In this document: positions 2,539 to 25,616 of the stretch, one piece after another
Layout: each line of letters starts with the position of its first letter
Numbering within the stretch: the first letter of the stretch is position 1
Source: Octopus bimaculoides
Taxonomy: Eukaryota
NCBI RefSeq assembly: GCF_001194135.2
Contig: NC_068990.1
Coordinates: 22,928,020-22,986,909, forward strand
Direction: 5' to 3'
DNA length: 58,890 nucleotides
Position numbers and translations under genes: made by a program
The notes under the pieces: generated by a model
The model's database searches: none
Told to the model about the DNA's origin: nothing
The model's input: only the letters and a program-made list of their open reading frames with translations

Positions 2539-2570
<32 letters not shown>

Positions 2571-2571
2571 T

Positions 2572-3470
2572 TTGGAATTCAAGACGGGATGCCTCTGGGA
2601 GCTACTCTATCCTGATGACCTTGCTCTAATTGCTAAGTCACTCTCAGAACTGGAGGAAAAGTTTCAGGTGTGGAAGCAAGGATTAGAATCGAAGGGCCTT
2701 AGAGTCAACCTAGCTGAAACCAAAGTCCTAATAAGTAGGAAGACAGACAAACCACAAATCCCTTCAGGTAGATGGCCCTGTGCAATCTGTAGAAAAGGTG
2801 TAGGTAGAAACTCTATAAGATGTACCCAATGTAAGCTATGGACACATAAGAGGTGCAGCAATATCAAAGGGAGGCTAACTGGGAATATAGTTTTTGTATG
2901 TGGCAAATGTTCAGGTGCTATAAACACTGAAGATGTACAGAGAACAGCTTCTGTCACATTTCAGAGAGAAAAACTAGAAGTAGTCGATAGCTTCCGTTAC
3001 CTAGGGGACCAAGTCAGTAGTGTCACACCCTAGCAGTTGAGGGAACCTGTGGGAGAGGTAGACCCAGGAAAACCTGGGATGAGGTGGTGAAGCATGACCT
3101 TCGAACATTGGGCCTTACTGAGGCAATGACTAGTGACCAGGACCTTTGGAGATATGCTGTGCTTGAGAAGACCCAACAAGCCAAGTGAGACCATAGCTCA
3201 AGGCCTATGCCAGTGGGTGTAACCAGCCCATTTATGAATACCCCTCATTTATTGGACAATAAACCTTGCTTGTGAAGACACTGAGGCAAGGGAAATCAAA
3301 ATCGAAATTGCTGACGTGGCCGATGACAGTACTGCCTGATTGGCACTCGTGCCAGTGGAATGTTAAAAGCACATCTGAACATGGGGTGTAACCAACCCAC
3401 TTATGAGTACCCCTCCTTCACTGGACAATGAACTTTGCTTGCTTGCGAAGACCTATTGAGGCAAGTGTAA
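2572..3470 (+). mobile_element. RTE-clade LINE relic: RT domains 5-7 with PHD-type finger, internal deletion, C-terminus and 3' UTR
   Basis: Translates as LWELLYPDDLALIA (YADD degraded)...KGLRVNLAETKVL...EVVDSFRYLGDQ. After a jump at about 3020 it reads CHTLAVEGTCGRGRPRKTWDEVVKHDLRTLGL...DLWR* (stop 3188), the typical RTE C-terminal GRPRKTW motif. Confidence 0.88.
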
Positions 3471-10355: not shown

Positions 10356-10565
10356 ACTCTTTACTCGTTTTACTTGTTTCAGTCATTTGACTGTGGCCAT
10401 GCTGGAGCACTGCCTTTAGTCGAGCAAATCGACCCCAGGACTTTGTAAGCCTAGTACTTATTCTATTGGTCTCTTTTGCCAAAGCGCTAAGTTACGGGGA
10501 TGTAAACACAACAGCATCAGTTGTCAAGCGATGTTGGGGGGACAAACACAGGCACACAAACATAT

Positions 10566-10650
<85 letters not shown>

Positions 10651-10822
10651 CATACATATATACGACAGGCTTCTTTCAGTTTCCATCTACCAAATCCACT
10701 CACAAGGCTTTGGTCGGCCCGAGGCTATAGTTGAAAACACTTGCCCAAGGTGCCACGCAGTAGGACTGAACCCGGAACCATGTGGTTCGTAAGCAAGCTA
10801 CTTACCACACAGCCACTCCTAC
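10356..10822 (-). mobile_element. tRNA-derived SINE family A, full copy with internal (TA)n expansion
   Basis: Minus strand starts gtggctgtgtggtaagtagcttgctt...ggttcagtcct (Pol III A/B-box-like). The same body recurs more than 10 times in the window. Confidence 0.85.
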
Positions 10823-12686: not shown

Positions 12687-13073
12687 ACTCTTTCACTTGT
12701 TTCAGTCATTTGACCGTGGTCATGCTGGAGCACCGCCTTTAATCGAGCAAATCGACCCCAGGATTTATTCTTTGTAAGCCTAGTATTTATTCTATTGGTC
12801 TCTTTTGCCGAACCACTAAGTTACGGGGACATAAACACACCAGTATTGGTTGTCAAGCAATGTTGGGAAGACGTAGACACACATACATACATATATATAC
12901 ATATATACGACGGGCTTCTTTCAGTTTCTGTCTACCAAATCCACTCACAAGGCTTTGGTCGGCCCGAGGCTATAGTAGAAAACACTTGCCCAAGGTGCCA
13001 CACAGTGGGACTGAACCTGGGACCATGTGGTTCGTAAGCAAGCTACTTACCACACAGCCTCTCCTACGCCTAT
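12687..13073 (-). mobile_element. SINE family A copy
   Basis: Near-identical to 10356-10822 except for a shorter internal microsatellite. Confidence 0.85.
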
Positions 13074-13132
13074 GATAATTAAAATAATAATAATAATTTT
13101 AAAAATAGTATACAGTACTGTACTGTTTCTAC

Positions 13133-13267: not shown

Positions 13268-13371
13268 CTGAAGCCGTCCATTTCAGTCCGGCTACTACAG
13301 AATGGCGTATAACCATATGGTGCCCCACCCAAGTCTAGATCATACAGCTCTTGCAAATCTGTTCGTACAAT
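13268..13371 (-). CDS. UGGT: UGGT exon (104 nt, phase 0 to phase 2)
   Basis: ttctttcag|ATT GTA CGA...GGC TTC AG|gtcagt encodes [34 protein letters not shown](R). It continues the previous exon in frame and matches the UGGT motif [10 protein letters not shown]. Too short to appear in the ORF track. Confidence 0.96.
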
Positions 13372-14611
13372 CTGAAAGAAAAGAAAGTTTCAAAGAATGA
13401 GTTTATAAGTCATAAGTTATATTAACAACATGTTCAAATTGGCCATATGCAGCCTAAATAGTCTACTTGTTTTATATTCAAACTGACCAGATCCAGCCTT
13501 TCACTCCTACCCTGCAATGTCATTCTAAGAATAAACAATCACATCATCAAAATCTCAAAAACTATGAGATGATGCAGGACTGATTCTGAACAATAAGCAT
13601 TGAATTTGACAGAGAAAATCTCAAATGCTAAAGGGTTAGACTCTTTCTCTCTCTGACACACACAAGCATGTATTTGTCCACATTTGTGAATGTCAGGAGT
13701 TATAATGAGTAATGTCACTTCTGTCGACAAATAATCTGCTCACTTCACGTTTCCCAATACATGGAATAAGAGACCCTTTATTAAGGGTTAGTGACAGGAA
13801 AGGCATATTGAAATATTGATATGATAAAAAACAACAGAGAAGAAACACAAAACAAATGAATGCACACTCATGCATGCATACATACAAAAACAAATGTTTT
13901 AACTGAAGAAGATGATGTCTAAGAGATTACTTTCTTTCTATCCACTGCGTAATGGTCTGAAATGTATGTACTAAATGTATTCAAAAGATTATTTATTTCT
14001 CTTTATTATATAACATCATCATCATCATCATTTAATGTCTGTTTTGCCATGCTGGCATGGGTTCGATGGTTGGACAGGGGCTGGCTAGACAGGGGACTGC
14101 ACCAAATTTCACAGTTTGTATTGGCAGGGTTTTTACAGCTGGTTGCCCTTCCTAACACCAACCACCCGAGAGAGAGAGAGAGAGAGATAGATAGAGAGAG
14201 AGAGAGAGACAGACAGAGACAGAGAGAGAGAGAGACAGACAGAGAGAGAGTGTGTGTGTGAGGACACACAAACAAACACTCACATGCTAATATCGAACAG
14301 TGAGACTGAAAGCTCAATACTGCATTGGTGTATAAATACTCATTTATTTGCAGGCTAACAAGGTTACCAATAGTTTCATACCTAGAATCTTTATACATGA
14401 ACTTACTGGTAGCTTTGTTAACCCACAAATAATGTGTGTGTGTATGTGTGTATATATATACAGACACCTTTAAACTTTTACTCATTTTAGTCAAACAAAT
14501 TGGCCCTGGCGCTTATTTCAGCCTGGTACTTATTTTATTGGTCTCTTTTGTTGGACCGCTAAGTTAGAGAGATGTAAACAAGCTAACAAGTGATGGTGGA
14601 GGACAAACACC

Positions 14612-14651
<40 letters not shown>

Positions 14652-14789
14652 GTGTGTACATGAATCACTGTGTATGTGTGTGTACAAATCACCTTGTTTG
14701 TGTGTGTGTGATAAAGGGAGGGAGAGAGAAGTACTGTGTGTATGTGAGAGGGTGAGAATTGGTGTGTGCGTGAGAGGGAGAGAGAATCA

Positions 14790-14915
14790 CTGTGAATGTG
14801 TGTAGAATCGGTTTGTGTGTGTGTGGAGAATCGGTGCGTATGTGTGGAGAATCGGTGTGTGTGTGTGTGGAGAATTGGTGCGTGTGTGTGTGTGGAGAAT
14901 CGGTGCGTATGTGTG
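14790..14915. repeat. Minisatellite, about 20-26-bp unit gtgtgtggagaatcggtg(c)
   Basis: About five degenerate copies embedded in (TG)n. Confidence 0.8.
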
Positions 14916-15637
14916 AGGGAAAGAGAATTGCTATGTATGTGTGTGAGAGAGAAAAAGTTGCTGTGTGTGTGTGTGAGTAGTGTGTATGAGAGAGAGAGAT
15001 AACCATTTGGTATGTGTTTGAATCATCCTTGTGTGTGCGCGTGTGAGTGAGTGAGAGTGTTTGAATCATCCTGTTGTGTATTTGTATGTATAAACAATAC
15101 AGAAAGAATTATGATGGTTAACGCAGAAAACAAGAAGCCTGATAAGCTACGTGAATATGTTAATAACACCTGTGCCATCTGTAAAGTGAGAAAACAATGG
15201 AGCCTGTCAATAGATCCTCGACTGAAAGGACGGGAGTAGGAAAACACAAGGACCAGAGACACAACAGAACACACACAGACAAGATAGAGACACAACAGAA
15301 AACGCCAATCAATCAATCATCGGGTCAATGAAGCATGGTATTTTGACAAGTTGAATCTAGTTGTAAAATTTCAGTTCCATTGTCGTCGTTTAGAAAGCAT
15401 GCACACAAGCCATTGTGCAGAGTACATGGACGTGAAACTGGTGTCACACGAACTGTCGTGCAGAGAACAACGAAAAAAATTTTTTTAACAAGCTGGTTAA
15501 ATTAATCTTCACAAACAAAAAAAAAAAGAAGAAAAACATTAATGGATTGAAGTGAGATGAAACTTATTAAGAAGAATAAACAATAGCTCAGATCAAACCA
15601 TGTATAAAACAATATAGAAACTATAATTGACAATGTT

Positions 15638-15697
<60 letters not shown>

Positions 15698-15844
15698 CAC
15701 ACATTATAGGTTGGGGAGAAAAAGAAAACATTAAAAGAATACCAAAACAAAAGAAAAAATAATAGCTCTGGTTGGAAAACAATATGCGAGTGTGTGTGTG
15801 TTATATATGAATGTACATACATGTTTTATATAACGCATACAGAT

Positions 15845-15878
<34 letters not shown>

Positions 15879-16030
15879 GTATGTATATCATCATATATAT
15901 ATATATGTGAAGTTTTCCAGCGGTCACATGGGTAACACAGTGTGTGCATATATGTACACACACACACACACACACACACAATATCTGTTTATCTAGGTGA
16001 ATCAACATGTAAGTGTGTGTAACATTACGT

Positions 16031-16081
<51 letters not shown>

Positions 16082-16734
16082 CACACATACATTTGTATGT
16101 GTGTGTAGCTATCTATCTATCCTATTTATAAACACATACACACATATATTAAATGCGTTTATCCAAGGAAACAGACGTGTGTGTGTGTGTGTAAGTGTGT
16201 GCCATGTCAGGTTGAAGAGAAAATTGCAAACTTGTGCAATCAGCCTGAAAAAAATATATTTCAACACAGACCTGCTTTTATTGATTGAAATAATAGCCAT
16301 TAGAATCTACACATAATGTCAAAATAACAAACATAGGGATTTATTCTGTCTGCAATAGAATTTCCAAATCCCAAAAACTGATGACTTCTTTGAAGGCATT
16401 CTGACATGCTGCTTCCTAGACACACACACACACACACACAGACGCATACTAATATCAAACAGTGAAAATGAGTGCTTAACACTGCATTGGTGGATAAATA
16501 CTCTTTTTTTTTTGTGGATTAGCAAGGTTACCAATGGTTTCATGCATGATCATTCTTTACAGTTGTTCAAGTATGGCACATGCAAACACTGGTACTCATC
16601 GCCATTTTGGATGAGAAAAGAGACTGGAGATGAGAAGTCTTGGGAGAAAGCCGGCCAAAGTAGTTTCGTAGCTTACTGCAGTTATTTCAGTGGAGAGGAA
16701 TTGGTCCTTTTTTTATGGATTCATAATCTTACTT

Positions 16735-16861
16735 CAGGGTGTCCACAAGGTCTGGGTACATGGAGTAAATAAAATCATAACATAAACAATTAAATATAAG
16801 AAATAATTATTTCTGAAAGTATGTGTTAATCCCCGAGTACCCAGACTTTGTGGACACCCTG
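16735..16861. mobile_element. 127-bp Tc1/mariner-type MITE
   Basis: 25-bp TIRs with one mismatch: cagggtgtccacaaggtctgggtac and gtacccagactttgtggacaccctg; TA on the right flank. A similar GGACACCCTG end occurs at about 44103-44112. Confidence 0.8.
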
Positions 16862-17689
16862 TATAATGAGTGTTATGTCCAGCTGTCTGTCTTTTCCCTT
16901 TTCACAGTCAAACGTCTGGACCAATGGTCACAATGTTTTTCGGGATTACGAAGAAGATAATCAGGAAGGTTATTAGCAAACAAAAAAACGAAAAAAGTGA
17001 AAAAGTATGATTATTTAGTAGATATTAAGGGTAATTGTTCAGTTTATAGGTGTAAAAAAAATTAAATAGGAATTAAGGAGGAGATAACTAATAAAAGTAG
17101 CAAAGGGAAGCAAGTCAGCTTAATTTTAATTCTGCATACACAACTGATACAGCATTCAAACAGTGAACAGATATTTTATTCTTCTCCACTGAATTATGCT
17201 ATATAAATTCGTGCAAATATGAAACAAATGAAGCCTCTAAAGTGCTGAATTGACAGCGTAATTTGTGTTTAACACACATCCATGTTTCCCATATTTTCTT
17301 CATATACAATCACCTAAGTGTATGTACCACCATTTAAAATTCCACTATTATGGTATGATCAATGGCCATCTTCTAACTATGTGACTTCCGTGCAGAATTC
17401 ACCACTGAATTAATGCTGTGAAAGTCTGCTCAGGACAATCAGGTACTTTCACTAAGAAACATTTCTTAGAAACTTTCTCTATTCTGCTGAAGACCCACTC
17501 ACCCTTAATTTTTATATTCTTTTTTAATCCCGTAAAGTGAACAATTACCGATATTGAGTTTTGTATTAGTAAATCACCTTTGACTTTTTTTTGTTAAAAT
17601 TCGGGCGATGAGGATTAACTCTGGATTTCTACCCAGTATTGCTCATGTATAGATAGTTCAAATTTGTGATACTCTCCTTTTATTTCCCA

Positions 17690-17901
17690 TTGTAGAAGAG
17701 CATATTCCTAAAGATTCCGCTCACGCATTCACAGCAAACAAGGCACAAGGCCAGACTTTAGATCGTGTAGGTGTATTTTGACCCACTCCGATGTTTACAC
17801 ACAGTCAGTTATATGTTGCTATGAGTAGAGCAACAGACTCCAGTAATGTGAAAATTAGTGTCAACCAAACAGAAAATATCATCTACAAAGAAGTTTTGTA
17901 A
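17690..17901 (+). mobile_element. Helitron Pif1-like helicase C-terminal relic
   Basis: Frame from 17701 reads ...AHAFTANKAQGQTLDRVGVF*PTPMFTHSQLYVAMSRATDSSNVKISVNQTENIIYKEVL*. This matches the Helitron Rep/Hel ending AxTINKSQGQTL..VG..L..PVFSHGQLYVA.SR...TxNIVYKEVL, with one internal stop. Confidence 0.85.
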
Positions 17902-18132
17902 TCATATTGCTATTATCGAAAGGAATATGATTCATAATTTAAATAAGGAAATGTGTGAACTTTGAATGTAAAAGAGTATAAACAAGTGTAAAATAGTTAG
18001 TGTAGACAACTAAAATACAAGTATATCTAAATAACATTTTTTCTTAATACTTTTTACGTAGTGGCTGCAGGCTAATGACTGAAAAACACAAAAATTAAAA
18101 GAGGAAAAATCCAAATATTTTGAATGCATTCA

Positions 18133-18554
18133 ATCACAATAATGGCTCTCAACTGCTTGTTGATGGATCATCCATGAAGTTTCTGTATCATCAAGGGTCT
18201 CGCTACAACTGCATAAGTTTTGGAACCAGCATTTAGCTGTACAAATGCCGTCACTCCACTTGCTAGCCAAATGATTGCTTAATTATTGCAAGCTGTCTTC
18301 TCTGATTAGCATTCCATTTTAAACTCTTCAAATAAATCGCTCAAATCTGTTTCCTTTCCACCACCATCTAAAATTTGACAGCCGAAAATAAACCAAAATA
18401 AACAATGAAAGTGCTACTATTACCATAAACCAACAGACTGAGATTTGTTCTTCAAAACAGTAGTATTACATGAATATTTCCACCCCACACAAAAAAAGCA
18501 CCAGAGTTTAAAATAATAAATAAGAGATGCAATTATTTTGGCACCGAGTTAATA
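18133..18554 (-). mobile_element. Mariner (Hsmar1/cecropia-like) 5' fragment: TIR plus N-terminal HTH of transposase, decayed
   Basis: TIR-like tattaactcggtgccaaaataattgcat at 18527-18554, ending in TA. From the ATG at 18367 it reads MVVERKQI*AIYL/EFKMEC*SEKTACN/KQSFG...TAKCWFQNLCSCSETLDDTE.../NKQLRAII. From memory, Hsmar1 reads MMLDKKQIRAIFLFEFKMG...TVQWWFKKFCKGDESLEDEE...DNDQLRAII. Confidence 0.8.
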
Positions 18555-18576
18555 TAAACATACACGCACACAGACC

Positions 18577-18652
<76 letters not shown>

Positions 18653-19501
18653 NNNNNNNNNNNNNNNNNNNNNNNNNNNNNNNNNNNNNNNNNNNNNNNN
18701 NNNNNNNNNNNNNNNNNNNNNNNNNNNNNNNNNNNNNNNNNNNNNNNNNNNNNNNNNNNNNNNNNNNNNNNNNNNNNNNNNNNNNNNNNNNNNNNNNNNN
18801 NNNNNNNNNNNNNNNNNNNNNNNNNNNNNNNNNNNNNNNNNNNNNNNNNNNNNNNNNNNNNNNNNNNNNNNNNNNNNNNNNNNNNNNNNNNNNNNNNNNN
18901 NNNNNNNNNNNNNNNNNNNNNNNNNNNNNNNNNNNNNNNNNNNNNNNNNNNNNNNNNNNNNNNNNNNNNNNNNNNNNNNNNNNNNNNNNNNNNNNNNNNN
19001 NNNNNNNNNNNNNNNNNNNNNNNNNNNNNNNNNNNNNNNNNNNNNNNNNNNNNNNNNNNNNNNNNNNNNNNNNNNNNNNNNNNNNNNNNNNNNNNNNNNN
19101 NNNNNNNNNNNNNNNNNNNNNNNNNNNNNNNNNNNNNNNNNNNNNNNNNNNNNNNNNNNNNNNNNNNNNNNNNNNNNNNNNNNNNNNNNNNNNNNNNNNN
19201 NNNNNNNNNNNNNNNNNNNNNNNNNNNNNNNNNNNNNNNNNNNNNNNNNNNNNNNNNNNNNNNNNNNNNNNNNNNNNNNNNNNNNNNNNNNNNNNNNNNN
19301 NNNNNNNNNNNNNNNNNNNNNNNNNNNNNNTATATATATTCACTATGAGGATATTCAGACCTCTTATAGAGATATTTTTATCCAAGATACACTGGTTTAA
19401 CATATTGTATTTTGAAGAGATATTTCTTCAAAGAATATATTATATAAAATATCATAAAATATCAAATATTATTAAGTTTGAAAATGAAGGAATCTAATGG
19501 T

Positions 19502-19796
19502 TACAAATTAATTTATTAGTTAATTAATTAACATCTTCACCTACAATTGTTTCATTTCTCAACCAAAATTAAAGCTACAAAACGTACATAAATATATAAT
19601 CTTGCATTTTAAAATACTTTGGGTGGAAAATCATCAAGGTGTACAAAAGGACAATACAAGGATTACATTATGATTTCCCACCCCAGGTATTTTAAAATGC
19701 ATGATTATATATCTATATGTTTTGTAGTTTCAATTTTGGTTGAGAAACAAAACAATTGTAGATCAAGATGTTAATTGATTAATAAATTAATTTGTA
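19502..19796. repeat. AT-rich foldback element (about 130-bp imperfect arms), MITE-like
   Basis: tacaaattaatttattag...ctacaattgttt...ttctcaaccaaaatt...gcattttaaaatac...gggtgg pairs with ccaccc...gtattttaaaatgc...aattttggttgagaa...aaacaattgtag...taataaattaatttgta. Confidence 0.85.
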
Positions 19797-20624
19797 TCCA
19801 TTAGATCTCTCTGTTTTCAAACTTAAAAATTATTTATGTATGTGTTCTTTCCTTCTAGTGGTTATGATGATGACTGTTCCAGTTGATACAATCAACCGAA
19901 CAGCCTGCTTGTGAAATTAATGTGCAAATGGCTGAGCACTTCACAGATACAAACACCCTTAACATAGTTCTCTGTGAGATTCAGCAATGATACAATAGTG
20001 TGACAAGACTGGTCCTCTGAATCACAGGCACAACACATTTTTGCCAGCTGAATGAACTGAAGCAATGTGAAATAGAGTGTCTTGCTCAAGAACACAATGA
20101 ATCAAACCCATGACCTTCTATTTTTTACATACTTTGGTCATTGGGCTGTGGTGTTGCTGGGACACCACAATGAAGAGTTTAGTCAAATAAATTGACACCA
20201 GGACTTATTTTTTAAGCCTGGCACTTATATTGGTCTCTCTTGTTGAACTACTAAGTTAAGGGCAGATAAGCAAATCAACACTAGTTATCAAGTGATGGTA
20301 GTGACAAATATACACACACATATATTCATATATGTGTGTATTAAGTTAAATTGTTGAGTATTAATTGAAACAGCTCTAAGAAGCAAAGATGACCAATTTG
20401 TTGTTAACAATAAACAATTATTAACTTCCTAATCTCCATTTTCTTTTCGTCTTTTAAATGGATATGAAGGAATGGTTATAATTTACTTACTGAATTTATT
20501 TATCAATACATTTTTACATCTTTTAATTTGCATTACTTTCCCAATTGTAACACAAATAAAATGAACCAATCATCTTTTTAATTTTTCTTCTCCATTTTCT
20601 TTTACTGACCTTTTAATTATCTAT

Positions 20625-20660
<36 letters not shown>

Positions 20661-21137
20661 NNNNNNNNNNNNNNNNNNNNNNNNNNNNNNNNNNNNNNNN
20701 NNNNNNNNNNNNNNNNNNNNNNNNNNNNNNNNNNNNNNNNNNNNNNNNNNNNNNNNNNNNNNNNNNNNNNNNNNNNNNNNNNNNNNNNNNNNNNNNNNNN
20801 NNNNNNNNNNNNNNNNNNNNNNNNNNNNNNNNNNNNNNNNNNNNNNNNNNNNNNNNNNNNNNNNNNNNNNNNNNNNNNNNNNNNNNNNNNNNNNNNNNNN
20901 NNNNNNNNNNNNNNNNNNNNNNNNNNNNNNNNNNNNNNNNNNNNNNNNNNNNNNNNNNNNNNNNNNNNNNNNNNNNNNNNNNNNNNNNNNNNNNNNNNNN
21001 NNNNNNNNNNNNNNNNNNNNNNNNNNNNNNNNNNNNNNNNNNNNNNNNNNNNNNNNNNNNNNNNNNNNNNNNNNNNNNNNNNNNNNNNNNNNNNNNNNNN
21101 NNNNNNNNNNNNNNNNNNNNNNNNNTAGCTGTTAAAG

Positions 21138-21778
21138 CAGTGGTCCTCCACTGGGGTCCATATAACATTTTGTTGTTGAAAATTAGGTGCAATATGTTGG
21201 TTATACTTCTACAACACAAAATATTTTGTCAATTGTTTAATACAGTTTCTAATAATATTATAAAAGTATAATTTTGTTTTTACTGGTTTCGATCATTAGA
21301 CTGTGGCCTTGCTGGGGCACTGCCTCGAAGAATTTTCAGTTGAATGAATCGACCCCAGCATTTTTTTGTTTTCTTTTTAAGCTTGGTACTGTTTCTAGTG
21401 ATCTCTTTTGTTGAACTGCTAAGTTATGGGGATGTAAACACACCAACACCAGCTACCAAGCAGAGTGGGGAACCAACACAAAGACACACACACACACACA
21501 TCTATACAGAAAGGCTTCTTTCAGTTTCTGTCAAGCAAATCCACTCACAAACCTTTGGTTTGGTCTGAGGCTATAGTAGAAGAGACTTGCCCAAAGGTGC
21601 CACTAAGAAGGACCGAACCCAGAACCATTTGGTTGGGAAGCAAGCTTCTAACCACTCAGCCATGCCTGCGCCTATAATGGAATTTGTTTTTTAAAACATC
21701 AAATGTCTAAGGGGGTCCAGTAGAGTAAAAGAGGAATCAAAGGGATCCACAGGTAGAAAATGGCTGGGAATCCCAATG
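21138..21778. mobile_element. Possible hAT-type MITE interrupted by a SINE (21284-21676)
   Basis: Left end cagtggtcctccactggggtccat; right part ggggtccag...gggatccacagg...ggctgggaatcccaatg. The TIR match is poor. Confidence 0.3.
21284..21676 (-). mobile_element. SINE family A copy
   Basis: Same head, body and tail blocks (ggctatagtagaag..acttgcccaa; gctaagttatggggatgtaaacacacc). Confidence 0.8.
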
Positions 21779-22667
21779 CTTAAGTGTATTCTGAAGGAAA
21801 TTTTCTCAGCTATTTCTAACAGCTCAGGAGGCCATGTAAGAGCCTCCTTCATTAGCTCAGAAAGAACATCTTAACGAAGCTCGTGTATTTTATTGCAAAC
21901 TTAACTGTATTTCTTGCAGAAAGAAACACTGAAGGCATAATTAGTACAAAATGGAAATATCTGCTTATGGATCTAATGCAGAGAGAAAGGAGGGGATCGT
22001 AAACATAGGTGGTGGAAGGGATGGGTTGGTGGGGTGAATCAATCTAACTATCTTTTGCTGTTACAAGGGGTTTCAGTAGAGACAAAGGGAAGACTACAAA
22101 CACAACGGGAGACTTAGTTAGCACTGAGCCAAAAAAAAAAAAAAATCTTAACCATAAATACCAATAAGTGACTTAATTAAAACGACATGTTCTATTCTTG
22201 CCAAAGTGTTATGCTATCATTTGCTGATTCGTGTGTTATCAGTAAACAGTCTGAATAAACACAGAATGGTAAGAATGGTAACAATTAGAAGAGAGTAAAG
22301 AGTTTAAGATAACAATACGGAGTGTTTACAACAGAGTCTTGATATCAGGATGCAGTGAAATGATTCTCCATCATCACCAATATCTCGTTAGTGTCTCAAA
22401 AGAAATCAACACCCAATGGTGGAAGAATTTTCTTTTCTTCATGTTTTGCAATTTTTCTTTAAATTTAAAAACATTTTTGTTTATTTATTTAATTATTTTC
22501 TGTAAATGATAAATAAACCAAAATCTACAAAACAAGTCAGCCAAAACAAAATGATGTTTTTCCTTAACGATTTTAATTACCAGTGAGTCACTTATTTCCT
22601 CACTATTCTCTTTTTTATTTTTCAGTCACAAATTAAGAGTAGGAAAAAATAATGTATATACATATAT

Positions 22668-23314
22668 ATAGGTGCAGGTGTGGTTGTGTGGTAAGAAGCT
22701 TGCTTCTCAACTACATGGTTCCGGGTTCAGTCCCAGCGTGTGGTACTTTGGGTAAGTGCCTGTTTTTATTATAGCTTTGGACTAACTAAAGCCTTGTGAA
22801 TGGATTTGGTAGATGGAAACTACAAGAATCCGAGATGGCAGAAACGTTAGCACGCCGGGCGAAATGCTTAGTGGTATTTTGTCTGCCGTTACATTCTGAG
22901 TTCAAATTCTGCCGAGGTCAACTTTGCCTTTCATCCTTTCGGGGTCGATAAATTAAGTACCAGTTATGCACTGGGGTCGATGTAATCGACTTAATCCCTT
23001 TGTCTATTCTTGTTTGTCCCCTCTTTGTGTAGTCCCTTGTGGGCAATAAAGAAATAGGAAACTACAAGAAGCTTGTTGTATAATTATCTATGTGCGCGTG
23101 TGTATTTGTTTCTGTGTTTGTTTTTCACCACCACTTGAAAACAGGTGTTGGTGTGTTTACATCCCTGTAACCTAGTGGTTCAACAAAAAGAGTCAATAAA
23201 ATAAGTAGTAGGCTTAAAGAAATAAGTATCAGGGTTGATTTGTTTGATTAAAAATTCTTCAAGTCCGGCACCCCAGCATGGCCACAGTCTAATGACTGAA
23301 ACAGGTAAAAGATA
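22668..23314 (+). mobile_element. SINE family A copy containing a nested family B SINE (22829-23056)
   Basis: Family A sequence is interrupted by family B, flanked by a perfect 14-bp duplication ggaaactacaagaa (22815-22828 and 23057-23070). Confidence 0.85.
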
Positions 23315-23689
23315 AATAATAATGACTTGTAGGCCCATGATATTTCATTATGCAACCATAATATACTATTAAAGTATATTAAACGCTTTTATAAGTCAAT
23401 ACTGTGTACTTCTGTGTTAGCAGTGCCATTACATCACTTGTTAAGGTCATCTCTTCAGATTTTCTATAGAAATTATAGCCAGCACTGGATTTGTTAAATT
23501 TCATGTCTGAGATGTCACATGTAAACGAACAATGAGAAAGAAGATGAAAAAATGGGTAATGGGCATATATGCCATATTTTGGGAGATTTTACTCCTTCAT
23601 CAGCACCCATCCAACTCATTTAATCATACACTCATTACCCATCTTTTCATCTTCGATCTCATTATTTGTTTGCCTGTGATATCTTGAAT

Positions 23690-24081
23690 ATGCTTGCTTC
23701 CCAACTACATGGTTCTGGGTTCAGTCCCATTTCATGGCACCCTGGACAAGTGCCTTCTACTGTAGCCTCAAGCCAAATGAAGCCTTGTGAGTGGATTTGG
23801 TAGATGGAAACTGAAAGAATCCCATCATATTCATATGTTTGTGTGGTGAGTGCGTGTGTGTATCTATGTGTGTGTGTCTTTGTGTCTGTGTTTGTCACCC
23901 CACCCATCACTGCTTGACAACCAGTGTTGGTGTGTTTACGTCCCCGTAACTTAGTGGTTTGACAAAAGAGACCGATAAAATAAGTACCAGGCTTCAAAAA
24001 TAAGTCCTGGGGCTGATTCATTCAAGGCAGTGCCCCAGCATGGCCGCGGTCTAATAACTGAAGCGAGTAAAAGTGATAAAA
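23690..24081 (+). mobile_element. SINE family A copy (slightly 5' truncated)
   Basis: gcttgcttcccaactacatggttctgggttcagtccc...gtgccccagcatggccgcggtctaataactgaagc. Confidence 0.8.
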
Positions 24082-24997
24082 GAGTATATGCAAACATGCT
24101 TCAGCACATATATACATATATACTTTATATACACACAAACATACAGACACACACACACACACATATGACCCCCACTGCCACCCCCATTGATGTTACCTTC
24201 ATTCCAATGAGTGCTTTGCTTCTAGGTTAGAAATAAACCCTTACCCAATTGGTGAGAAATTCAAAAAAATTAAACCAGAGAAATATATATATATACCACA
24301 CACACACACACACACACACACATTCACACATACAATCACACAGATGCGTGTGGGTAAGTGTGTGTAAGTATGTGTGTGTATATGCACATGCAGGTATGTG
24401 TGCGTGTGTATATGTATGAATACTCGCGCGCATGCCTAGGATATTTTTTTTGCATGTAAAGCTATATTGCTTCCAGAGTAATTTTAATTTCAAACTCACC
24501 TGCAAATGGTAGGGAGGACAGATGGAAGAACAAATTTATTTTATCAACATCAGAAACCACGCTTTCTTCCTTTTCCAAAAAACACCAATAAGATTACAAG
24601 TGAAAATTCCTCGAAAACATTTCCCAAAACTCAGAAATATACTTTGCTCATGAGGTTTAAAAACACAACAGTCTTAAGGCCATATAACTCGGAAATATCT
24701 TCAACAAACATAAAATAAACATTTATTCCTATTCATTTTATCCTTCTAACTCTGGAACTTCCAAATCACTGCCAACTATCAGCTTAAATTTAGAAATTAC
24801 AAGAATCTGAAATACTGACAGGCTCTTTTTAATTTTATTTCTTTTTCATAGGTGTAGCTGTGTGGTAAGTAGCTTGCTTCCCAACCACAAAATTCCGGTT
24901 TCAGTCCCACTGCATCTTCTCAAACAGCCTTCGGCCAACTAGAGCGTTGTGAGTGGATTTGGTAGGCAGAAACTGGAAAAAGCTTGTCATATATACA

Positions 24998-25034
<37 letters not shown>

Positions 25035-25616
25035 NNNNNNNNNNCATATGATAATAATATTAGGGAAAAAATTCCAAATTTACAGGGAAAATTCAATTTA
25101 ATTTATCAAAAATTAAATTTTACAATATATAATATATAAATATATAATTTAGAGAAAAAAAACACAATTATTCAATTCATCCATGAAAATCCACAATCAC
25201 ATATAGAAAATTTTATAAAAGTAATAAATATTAATTATTTTAATATTTAATATTTATTACTTTGTACTTTTCAGTCAAATAACTCCTAATAACGAATAAA
25301 ATCCATAAAACTACACTAATAAACATTTTCCATATATATATATACATATATACACATACATTTACAGGGGTTGGACATCATCATCAACATTATCATCGTT
25401 TAACGTCTGCCTTACATGCTAGCATGGGTTGGACGATTTGACTGAGGACTGGCGAACCAGAAGGCTGCAACAGGCTCCAATCTGATCTGGCAGAGTTCGA
25501 TTGTAGTCGTGGCCAATGACGGTGTCACATAACTAGCACGTCAAAGCACCCATTGCAGTCTTGGAGTGGTTGGCATTAGGAAGATCATCCAGTCATAGAA
25601 ACCATGCCAAAACTAT

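What the first reader, a model, noticed from the sequence alone, without database searches (positions are those of the whole stretch)
24491..24540. Candidate recursive splice site (zero-length exon, AG|GT) inside the 29.6-kb UGGT intron
On the UGGT (minus) strand the sequence reads aataaatttgTTCTTCCATCTGTCCTCCCTACCATTTGCAG|GTGAGTttg. That is a long polypyrimidine tract ending in CAG, followed immediately by a consensus donor GTGAGT (junction 24500/24499). It lies in non-repetitive sequence, 18.4 kb from the donor and 11.1 kb from the acceptor. By eye it was the only site of this quality in the intron. This is the architecture of Drosophila ratchet points and vertebrate RS sites (established knowledge). 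I know of no description of recursive splicing in cephalopods, whose repeat-bloated introns would make it useful. Function is inference.
Basis: partly seen in the sequence, partly recalled or inferred. Interest (0 to 1): 0.75.

Follow-up and report, generated by a model that had tools for sequence, protein, structure and literature searches.

The report
Candidate recursive splice site, UGGT intron
A sequence that looks exactly like a fly-type "recursive splice site" (an acceptor fused to a donor) really sits in the middle of a 29.6-kb intron of a UGGT gene, but only its sequence could be checked here, so whether the cell uses it to remove the intron in two steps is still unproven.

Summary
On the minus strand at 24500/24499 the sequence reads ...ttcttccatctgtcctccctaccatttgCAG|GTGAGTttg. 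It lies inside the phase-0 intron (42948..13372) between the UGGT exons ...FVDADQ and IVRTDL.... By a crude PWM it is by far the best AG|GT of 286 on both strands. Its donor score is unbeaten in the window, and its acceptor beats three of the four real UGGT acceptors. Chance predicts about 0.004-0.01 such sites on the sense strand of this intron. The site is unique within the window. It has TT at -6/-5 and G at -4, like validated Drosophila ratchet points, and it scores within their range. The two segments (18.4 and 11.1 kb) are fly-typical.

The defining evidence could not be obtained: junction or lariat reads, a saw-tooth profile, and conservation. No related genome was reachable. No short cryptic RS-exon donor is present (nearest decent one at +255). 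The intron holds ten assembly gaps.

Verdict: a good sequence-level candidate. Recursive splicing is the best single explanation (about 0.4), a chance unused pseudo-site is close behind (about 0.35), and an unannotated exon boundary is less likely. If real, it is a new member of a known kind.

The parts
24500..24530 (-). Acceptor half. A 31-nt stretch, ttcttccatctgtcctccctaccatttgCAG, made of a pyrimidine tract (24 of the 30 nt before CAG are Y), TT at -6/-5, G at -4, and CAG.
   Evidence: PWM 3'ss score is 8.47, higher than 3 of the 4 real UGGT acceptors in the window.
24491..24499 (-). Donor half, GTGAGTttg. After ligation to the upstream exon (...GATCAG) it regenerates CAG|GTGAGT.
   Evidence: PWM 5'ss score is 9.37, with no higher-scoring GT on either strand of the window.
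24502..24561 (-). AG-free zone upstream of the acceptor (nearest upstream AG at -64). It contains two branch-point-like yUnAy motifs: TTGAT with A at 24544 (-45) and CTGAT with A at 24550 (-51).
   Evidence: sequence scan. Branch-point use is inferred.
24245..24499 (-). Only plausible cryptic 'RS-exon'. It is 255 nt, in frame and open, runs through a CA microsatellite, and ends at a weaker donor TGG|GTAAGG (G at 24244, score 4.45).
   Evidence: No PWM-positive donor lies nearer than +178.
24424..24825 (.). Island with no other copy in the window. It carries the site and lies between a CA microsatellite and an interspersed-repeat copy.
13372..42948 (-). Host intron of UGGT: phase 0, 29.6 kb as assembled, containing 10 N gaps.
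42949..43021 (-). Upstream UGGT exon (..[24 protein letters not shown]), with donor CAG|GTAAGT.
   Evidence: Pfam PF18404 on homologues.
13268..13371 (-). Downstream UGGT exon ([35 protein letters not shown]). Its acceptor, ttctttcag|ATT, scores only 3.58.

Best explanation
The AG|GT at 24500/24499 is a recursive splice site (ratchet point) of the UGGT pre-mRNA.

Proposed mechanism (inferred):
1. RNA polymerase transcribes the first 18.4 kb of the intron. The strong acceptor (pyrimidine tract, TTGCAG) then pairs with the exon donor at 42948.
2. Exon ...GATCAG is ligated to GTGAGTTTG. This releases a first lariat and regenerates a perfect donor, CAG|GTGAGT.
3. The regenerated donor is spliced to the true acceptor at 13372/13371, removing the remaining 11.1 kb.
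4. The mature mRNA is the same as after one-step splicing.

What is shown: the motif, its strength, its rarity, its position, and the exon context. What is inferred: that the spliceosome uses it, in what fraction of transcripts, and that it is maintained by selection.
For: - The motif is exact and on the sense strand.
- It is the best of 286 AG|GT sites in the window. Its donor score is unbeaten and its acceptor is stronger than 3 of 4 real acceptors, including the one it would pre-empt (3.58).
- Chance expectation is about 0.004-0.01 per intron, and 0 of 300 shuffles reach it.
- TT at -6/-5 is present in 99.5% of fly ratchet points and in 36 of 36 sampled fly sites. G at -4 and GTGAGT are both common in fly sites. 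The combined score falls at 14/36 of validated fly sites.
- A 62-nt AG-free zone with yUnAy motifs lies upstream.
- The intron length (29.6 kb) and segments (18.4 and 11.1 kb) fall inside the fly ranges: introns 11-133 kb, segments 2.6-64 kb with a mean of 18 kb, sites near midpoints.
- The site lies in sequence that is unique within the window.
- There is no usable upstream acceptor that would make the GT an ordinary exon donor.
- The only downstream donor is weaker than the regenerated one, as the donor-competition model requires.
Against: - No RNA evidence and no cross-species conservation could be obtained.
- In mouse, a large genome where long introns are the norm, fewer than 0.06% of expressed introns longer than 5 kb are recursively spliced. 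Those are introns longer than 51 kb, among the first introns of long neuronal genes. This intron is 30 kb and lies near the 3' end of a housekeeping gene.
- Fly sites normally have a short (about 50 nt) cryptic exon donor. Here the nearest decent donor is at +255.
- Branch-point-like motifs lie at -45 and -51, outside the fly peak of -21 to -36.
- In a Gb-scale genome, hundreds of equally good sites are expected by chance.
- The carrying contig is bounded by assembly gaps.
Confidence: 0.4

Rival explanations
1. This is a chance juxtaposition. A pyrimidine-rich stretch happens to precede CAGGTGAGT in neutrally evolving intronic DNA, and the site is ignored by the spliceosome or used only as rare noise.
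For: - The chance rate is 0.14-0.38 per Mb per strand, which implies hundreds of such sites in a Gb-scale genome.
- The finding was picked by eye as the best site in one window.
- In mouse, strong AGGT motifs vastly outnumber the roughly 20 real sites.
- There is no short cryptic exon donor to support exon-definition recognition.
- The pyrimidine tract is C-rich rather than T-rich as in fly sites.
- The surroundings are microsatellites and repeats, typical of junk intron.
Against: - Expectation within this intron is only about 0.004-0.01.
- Every extra fly-specific detail is also matched: TT at -6/-5, G at -4, a near-middle position, and a 62-nt AG-free zone.
- An acceptor stronger than the real one, transcribed 11 kb earlier, would be hard for the spliceosome to ignore. 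This last point is inference.
Confidence: 0.35
2. The site is a boundary of an unannotated ordinary exon. Either the AG is the acceptor of a cryptic, poison or alternative terminal exon that starts with GTGAGT (for example the 255-nt open exon ending at 24245). Or the GT is the donor of an alternative first exon or of another minus-strand transcript.
For: - In mouse, 46 of 84 junction-supported AGGT candidates turned out to be unannotated exons, against 19 recursive sites.
- A moderate donor, TGG|GTAAGG, lies 255 nt downstream. The interval is in frame and open.
- ATTAAA lies 13 nt downstream of the junction (read by eye).
Against: - No acceptable acceptor lies within 500 nt upstream of the GT (best score -1.0).
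- The 255-nt interval is mostly CA microsatellite. It would insert 85 residues between DADQ and IVRTD of the catalytic domain, which are contiguous in all homologues.
- ORFs around the site have no homologue or Pfam match.
- A perfect donor abutting the acceptor would out-compete the weaker downstream donor.
Confidence: 0.12
3. This is an assembly artefact. The 3.9-kb contig carrying the site (21126-25034) is misplaced or inverted in the scaffold, so the motif is not on the sense strand of this intron.
For: - The contig is bounded by N runs on both sides.
- The window has 17 gaps totalling 5.4 kb.
Against: There is no positive sign of misassembly. Repeats of the same families occur throughout the intron.
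Confidence: 0.05

Closest known systems
Drosophila zero-nucleotide-exon ratchet points (Ubx, kuz, Bx, luna; Burnette 2005, Duff 2015, Pai 2018, Joseph 2018/2021)
   Same: - Juxtaposed acceptor and donor around AG|GT on the sense strand.
- TT at -6/-5, G at -4, and a CAG|GTGAGT core. The 16-nt core TTTGCAGGTGAGTTTG is shared with a validated fly site.
- Host intron of 30 kb split into 18- and 11-kb segments near the middle.
- The regenerated donor is stronger than the nearest downstream donor.
   Different: - A different phylum.
- The pyrimidine tract is C-rich rather than T-rich.
- No roughly 50-nt cryptic RS-exon (nearest donor at +255, in frame).
- Branch-point-like motifs lie further upstream.
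- The host is a housekeeping ER enzyme gene rather than a developmental or neuronal gene.
- Use and conservation are not shown.
Vertebrate recursive splice sites with RS-exons (CADM1/2, HS6ST3, LSAMP etc.; Sibley 2015; Moon & Zhao 2022)
   Same: An AGGT with a U1-complementary donor, a pyrimidine-rich 20 nt upstream, and a high 3'ss score.
   Different: - Vertebrate sites lie in introns longer than 51 kb, usually the first or second intron of brain-expressed genes longer than 294 kb, and are highly conserved.
- Here the intron is 29.6 kb and lies in the 3' catalytic-domain region of UGGT.
Motif-predicted recursive site in the 230-kb NPF1 intron of the migratory locust (Wang et al., EMBO Rep 2022)
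   Same: A large-genome invertebrate outside Drosophila, with the site predicted from the fly motif matrix.
   Different: The locust site has some experimental support (U2AF65 RIP). The present site has none.
Cryptic or poison exons and pseudo-splice sites in long introns
   Same: Strong splice-site-like sequences occur deep in introns, and many arise by chance or from repeats.
   Different: Here the acceptor and donor abut with zero spacing. No partner site defines an ordinary exon.

Membership tests
Zero-length-exon recursive splice site (fly-type ratchet point) | [quoted passage not shown] | tested here: met
   It is the best of 286 AG|GT sites. Scores are 3'ss 8.47 and 5'ss 9.37, within the range of 36 validated fly sites.
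Zero-length-exon recursive splice site (fly-type ratchet point) | Prominent pyrimidine tract with TT at -6/-5 (99.5% of fly ratchet points) | tested here: met
   24 of 30 positions are Y. Positions -6/-5 are TT and -4 is G. The tract is C-rich, unlike the fly tracts.
Zero-length-exon recursive splice site (fly-type ratchet point) | Functional 5' splice site regenerated after ligation to the upstream exon | tested here: met
   The upstream exon ends ...GATCAG, so the product is CAG|GTGAGTTTG. This was shown at sequence level only.
Zero-length-exon recursive splice site (fly-type ratchet point) | Long host intron (fly: 11-133 kb), segments of about 3-64 kb, site near the midpoint | tested here: met
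   Intron of 29.6 kb with segments of 18.4 and 11.1 kb; the site is 62% of the way along. Lengths include 10 N gaps.
Zero-length-exon recursive splice site (fly-type ratchet point) | Short downstream cryptic RS-exon bounded by a weaker donor (about 50 nt; usually frame-breaking) | tested here: inconclusive
   No PWM-positive donor lies before +178. The best is TGG|GTAAGG at +255 (4.45 against 9.37), and that interval is in frame and open.
Zero-length-exon recursive splice site (fly-type ratchet point) | Branch point 21-36 nt upstream of the AG | tested here: inconclusive
   yUnAy motifs occur only at -45 and -51. The AG-free zone of 62 nt is compatible with a distal branch point.
Zero-length-exon recursive splice site (fly-type ratchet point) | Exon-to-site junction reads, saw-tooth nascent-RNA profile, and lariats to and from the site | not testable with these tools
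   No RNA-seq access. No window ORFs are in the assembly or protein collection.
Zero-length-exon recursive splice site (fly-type ratchet point) | Evolutionary conservation of the AG|GT core above its flanks | not testable with these tools
   No close relative was reachable. The best UGGT hits are 85-90% identical, from unrelated animals with a 0.5-3 kb orthologous intron. The intronic ORF has no homologue, and the 25-mer is absent from metagenome contigs.
Vertebrate-type RS site | Very long intron (>50 kb), early intron of a long neuronal gene | tested here: not met
   The intron is 29.6 kb and lies within the C-terminal catalytic-domain exons of UGGT.
Ordinary cassette or poison exon | A separate acceptor upstream of the donor (or a donor downstream of the acceptor) at exon-like distance with usable strength | tested here: not met
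   The best upstream acceptor within 500 nt scores -1.0. Downstream there is only a moderate donor at +255, reached through microsatellite sequence.

The most novel reading that the evidence does not exclude
This lineage (apparently a cephalopod) uses fly-type zero-length-exon recursive splicing routinely to clear repeat-expanded introns of only about 30 kb, even in housekeeping genes. That would make ratchet-point splicing a pan-bilaterian solution to intron bloat, rather than a dipteran speciality plus a few vertebrate neuronal cases.
Probability: 0.2. Interest if true: 0.6.

Novelty: new member of a known kind. Interest (0 to 1): 0.4.

Why it matters
Recursive splicing is documented genome-wide only in Drosophila and in a small set of vertebrate neuronal genes. 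The literature searches run here found nothing for cephalopods or other lophotrochozoans.

The same intron is only 0.5-3 kb long in three other animals and 29.6 kb here. This locus is therefore a clean case of lineage-specific intron expansion.

If the site is used, it would show that a ratchet point can arise or be retained as an intron inflates. It would also give a simple RT-PCR-testable entry point for asking how large-genome invertebrates keep splicing accurate. If it is not used, it shows that a site indistinguishable from fly ratchet points can be ignored. That would bear on what besides the motif defines a recursive site.

Tried and rejected
1. Conservation through protein searches. 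Two UGGT peptide queries returned only 85-90% identical fragments from unrelated animals and no close relative. The 70-aa ORF lying over the pyrimidine tract (24506-24718, plus strand) has no homologue. Ten window ORFs are absent from the collection.
2. Orthologous introns. They were fetched from three ENA contigs and two Logan contigs. Only the exons align, and the introns are 0.55, 1.2 and 3.1 kb, or more than 1.3 kb in the Logan contigs. They say nothing about the site.
3. An exact 25-mer scan of metagenome contigs gave 0 hits.
4. Rfam on 23000-26000 gave only sub-threshold miRNA-like hits on the CA microsatellite and nothing at the site.
5. RNA folding of 24420-24600 showed no unusual structure (z +0.64).
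6. Ordinary-exon reading. It was rejected for lack of an upstream acceptor.
7. Repeat-derived origin. No other copy exists in the window. A low-copy genome-wide repeat cannot be excluded.
8. MaxEntScan was not available. A PWM built from remembered consensus frequencies was used only for ranking, and it was calibrated on real sites in the window and on 36 fly sites.
9. The organism could not be identified. 'Cephalopod/octopus' rests on recollection of the repeat content and was not tested.

Full report
**What is there.**
- On the minus strand the window reads ...gataaaataaatttgttcttccatctgtcctccctaccatttgCAG|GTGAGTttgaaattaaaatt..., with the junction between 24500 and 24499.
- The host gene is a UDP-glucose:glycoprotein glucosyltransferase (UGGT) on the minus strand. 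tblastn with a remembered human UGGT1 C-terminus, plus direct reading, place four exons at 43021-42949, 13371-13268, 12368-12312 and 11199-10968. Database homologues carry Pfam PF18404.
- Exon 43021-42949 ends ...FVDADQ (GATCAG|GTAAGT). Exon 13371-13268 begins IVRTDL. These residues are contiguous in homologues, for example ...FVDADQIVRTDL... in P0009 and P0013.
- So 42948..13372 is one phase-0 intron of 29.6 kb as assembled. The site lies 18,448 nt from the donor and 11,127 nt from the acceptor.

**Caveats on the assembly.**
- The window has 17 runs of N (5.4 kb). Ten of them (about 3.5 kb) lie inside this intron.
- The site sits on a 3.9-kb contig (21126-25034) bounded by gaps on both sides.
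- Lengths are therefore estimates, part of the intron is unseen, and the orientation of the contig depends on scaffolding.

**Is it more than chance?** I scored every AG|GT on both strands with a simple acceptor PWM (16-nt pyrimidine tract, -3, +1) and a donor PWM (-3..+6). Both were built from remembered metazoan consensus frequencies and used only for ranking.
- The candidate scores 8.47 (acceptor) and 9.37 (donor), a sum of 17.8. The next best of the 286 sites sums to 10.8.
- No GT on either strand has a higher donor score. The four real UGGT donors score 8.66, 5.46, 3.76 and 4.91.
- The four real acceptors score 10.45, 3.58, 0.93 and 7.14. The candidate acceptor therefore beats three of them, including the true acceptor of this intron (3.58).
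- None of 300 dinucleotide-preserving shuffles of the window produced a site as good.
- Analytically, CAG|GTRAGT to YAG|GTRAGT is expected at about 5.7-15.5 per Mb per strand, and 2.5% of real 16-mers in the window are as pyrimidine-rich. This gives 0.14-0.38 sites per Mb per strand. That is about 0.004-0.01 for the sense strand of this intron, but hundreds across a Gb-scale genome.

**Context.**
- A self-comparison shows that 24424-24825 has no other copy in the window.
- The island is flanked by a CA-rich microsatellite (24281-24423) and by a partial copy of an interspersed repeat that occurs many times in the window (24826-25034; another copy at 23692-24166).
- Rfam finds only sub-threshold, microsatellite-driven miRNA-like matches at 24300-24445.
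- The RNA around the site is not unusually structured (z +0.64).
- ORFs over the site have no homologue and no Pfam match.

**Anatomy compared with known recursive sites.**
- Duff et al. report that fly ratchet points look like fused 3' and 5' splice sites. They have a prominent pyrimidine tract, and 99.5% have TT at -6/-5. They lie in introns of 11-133 kb and cut them into segments of 2.6-64 kb (mean 18 kb). Their branch points lie mostly at -21 to -36, and they are conserved.
- Pai et al. find them in 63% of fly introns longer than 40 kb and biased toward the midpoint.
- The candidate has TT at -6/-5, G at -4, C at -3 and GTGAGT. I scored 36 validated fly sites from Pai et al.'s S1 table with the same PWM. 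All 36 have TT at -6/-5, 21 have G at -4, and 11 use GTGAGT. The candidate's acceptor ranks above 10 of the 36, its donor equals the maximum, and its sum ranks above 14 of the 36.
- One fly site shares the 16-nt core TTTGCAGGTGAGTTTG with the candidate.
- Upstream of the candidate AG there is no other AG for 62 nt. yUnAy motifs lie at -45 and -51. That is compatible with a distal branch point but lies outside the fly peak.
- After the first step the upstream exon end, GATCAG, would regenerate CAG|GTGAGT.

**What does not fit.**
- Joseph et al. describe a short (about 50 nt), usually frame-breaking cryptic exon with its own weaker donor as part of the mechanism.
- Here no PWM-positive donor occurs before +178 (score 1.03). 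The only moderate one is TGG|GTAAGG at +255 (score 4.45).
- That 255-nt interval is in frame, open and largely microsatellite.
- The donor-strength relation (9.37 against 4.45) is as expected. The distance and the frame are not typical.
- The pyrimidine tract is C-rich (8 T, 9 C) where fly tracts are T-rich (mean 13.9 T, 4.2 C).

**Rival readings.**
- *Ordinary exon ending at the GT.* This needs an upstream acceptor, and the best within 500 nt scores -1.0.
- *Exon starting at the AG.* It would insert 85 microsatellite-encoded residues between DADQ and IVRTD of the catalytic domain. Still, in mouse 46 of 84 junction-supported AGGT candidates were unannotated exons against 19 recursive sites. 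An unannotated exon boundary therefore keeps some weight.
- *Chance.* This is the main rival. Its weight depends on how common real recursive sites are in this lineage. In flies about 6% of introns longer than 11 kb and most introns longer than 40 kb have one, so real sites would outnumber chance sites of this strength several-fold. In mouse fewer than 0.06% of expressed introns longer than 5 kb have one, and those are introns longer than 51 kb in long neuronal genes, so chance would dominate. A genome where long introns are the norm may behave more like a mammal.
- *Weighing (inference).* I put recursive splicing at about 0.4, a chance unused site at about 0.35, an exon boundary at about 0.12 and an assembly artefact at about 0.05.

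**Attempts to get decisive evidence.**
- Conservation could not be tested. The two UGGT peptide searches found only 85-90% identical fragments. Ten window ORFs are absent from the collection. The intronic ORF has no homologue. A 25-mer spanning the junction is absent from metagenome contigs.
- Three ENA contigs from unidentified animals carry the same four exons with the same intron position. There the intron is 0.55, 1.2 and 3.1 kb, and only the exons align.
- This shows the intron is old and has expanded roughly 10- to 50-fold here. It says nothing about the site itself.
- No RNA data are accessible.

**Novelty.**
- Searches for 'recursive splicing' with cephalopod, octopus, squid and genus names found no relevant paper. 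The single co-occurrence comes from two unrelated references in one reference list.
- A motif-predicted, partly validated site exists in a locust.
- If the site is real, it would be a new member of a known kind in a new phylum.
- That the organism is a cephalopod was not verified. It rests on my recollection of the repeat content.

**Verdict.** Interest is moderate.

Noticed in passing
window 13372-42948 compared with L001 4661-5207, L002 8857-10024, L003 6944-10009: The phase-0 intron between ...FVDADQ and IVRTDL... is at the same position in three unidentified ENA eukaryote contigs. There it is only 0.55, 1.2 and 3.1 kb, against 29.6 kb here. The four-exon structure of the catalytic domain is also shared.
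   Followed up: partly
window 23692-24166, 24826-25034, 12690-13096, 10356-10798, 31065-31496, 21278-21660, 45939-46201 and others: An interspersed repeat of about 400-480 bp is present in many copies (68-78% identical) on both strands. It looks like a tRNA-derived SINE by eye, but ARAGORN finds no tRNA. It was not classified.
   Followed up: partly
window 2570-3033 (+): A retroelement fragment. The ORF has a weak match to the C-terminal end of reverse transcriptase (RVT_1) followed by a PHD finger (PF00628, E 5.6e-06). It is interrupted upstream by an N gap.
   Followed up: partly
window 45540/45541 (-): The third AGGTRAGT on the sense strand (ctcctaag|GTAAGTTCT) is a strong donor-like site (7.66) with no pyrimidine tract (-3.58). 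The sequence upstream of it does not encode the expected preceding UGGT exon. No UGGT exon was found upstream of 43021 in the window, so that exon is more than 15.8 kb away or lies in a gap.
   Followed up: partly
window 24300-24445: The CA/TG microsatellite gives sub-threshold Rfam matches to repeat-derived miRNA families (mir-3149, mir-297, mir-466; 24-53 bits against gathering scores of 75-100). These are almost certainly low-complexity artefacts.
   Followed up: yes
window, 17 N runs (e.g. 41263-42158, 18653-19330, 44145-44784): Assembly gaps total 5.4 kb. Nearly all are flanked by TA or CA microsatellites, which suggests the assembly breaks at simple repeats. Gap sizes, and so intron lengths, are estimates.
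   Followed up: no
window 32614/32615 and 32356/32357 (-): These are the next-best sense-strand AG|GT sites in the same intron: cggcag|GTTAGT (4.29/4.63) and tttgag|GTAAGG (1.2/7.35). Both are far weaker than the candidate and score below the weakest of the 36 sampled fly sites on the acceptor side.
   Followed up: yes
window 28598-29078: Overlapping low-complexity ORFs on both strands (poly-Val on one, poly-Thr/Pro/His on the other) lie in a GC-richer patch (44% GC). This is probably a trinucleotide-type simple repeat. It was not examined.
   Followed up: no
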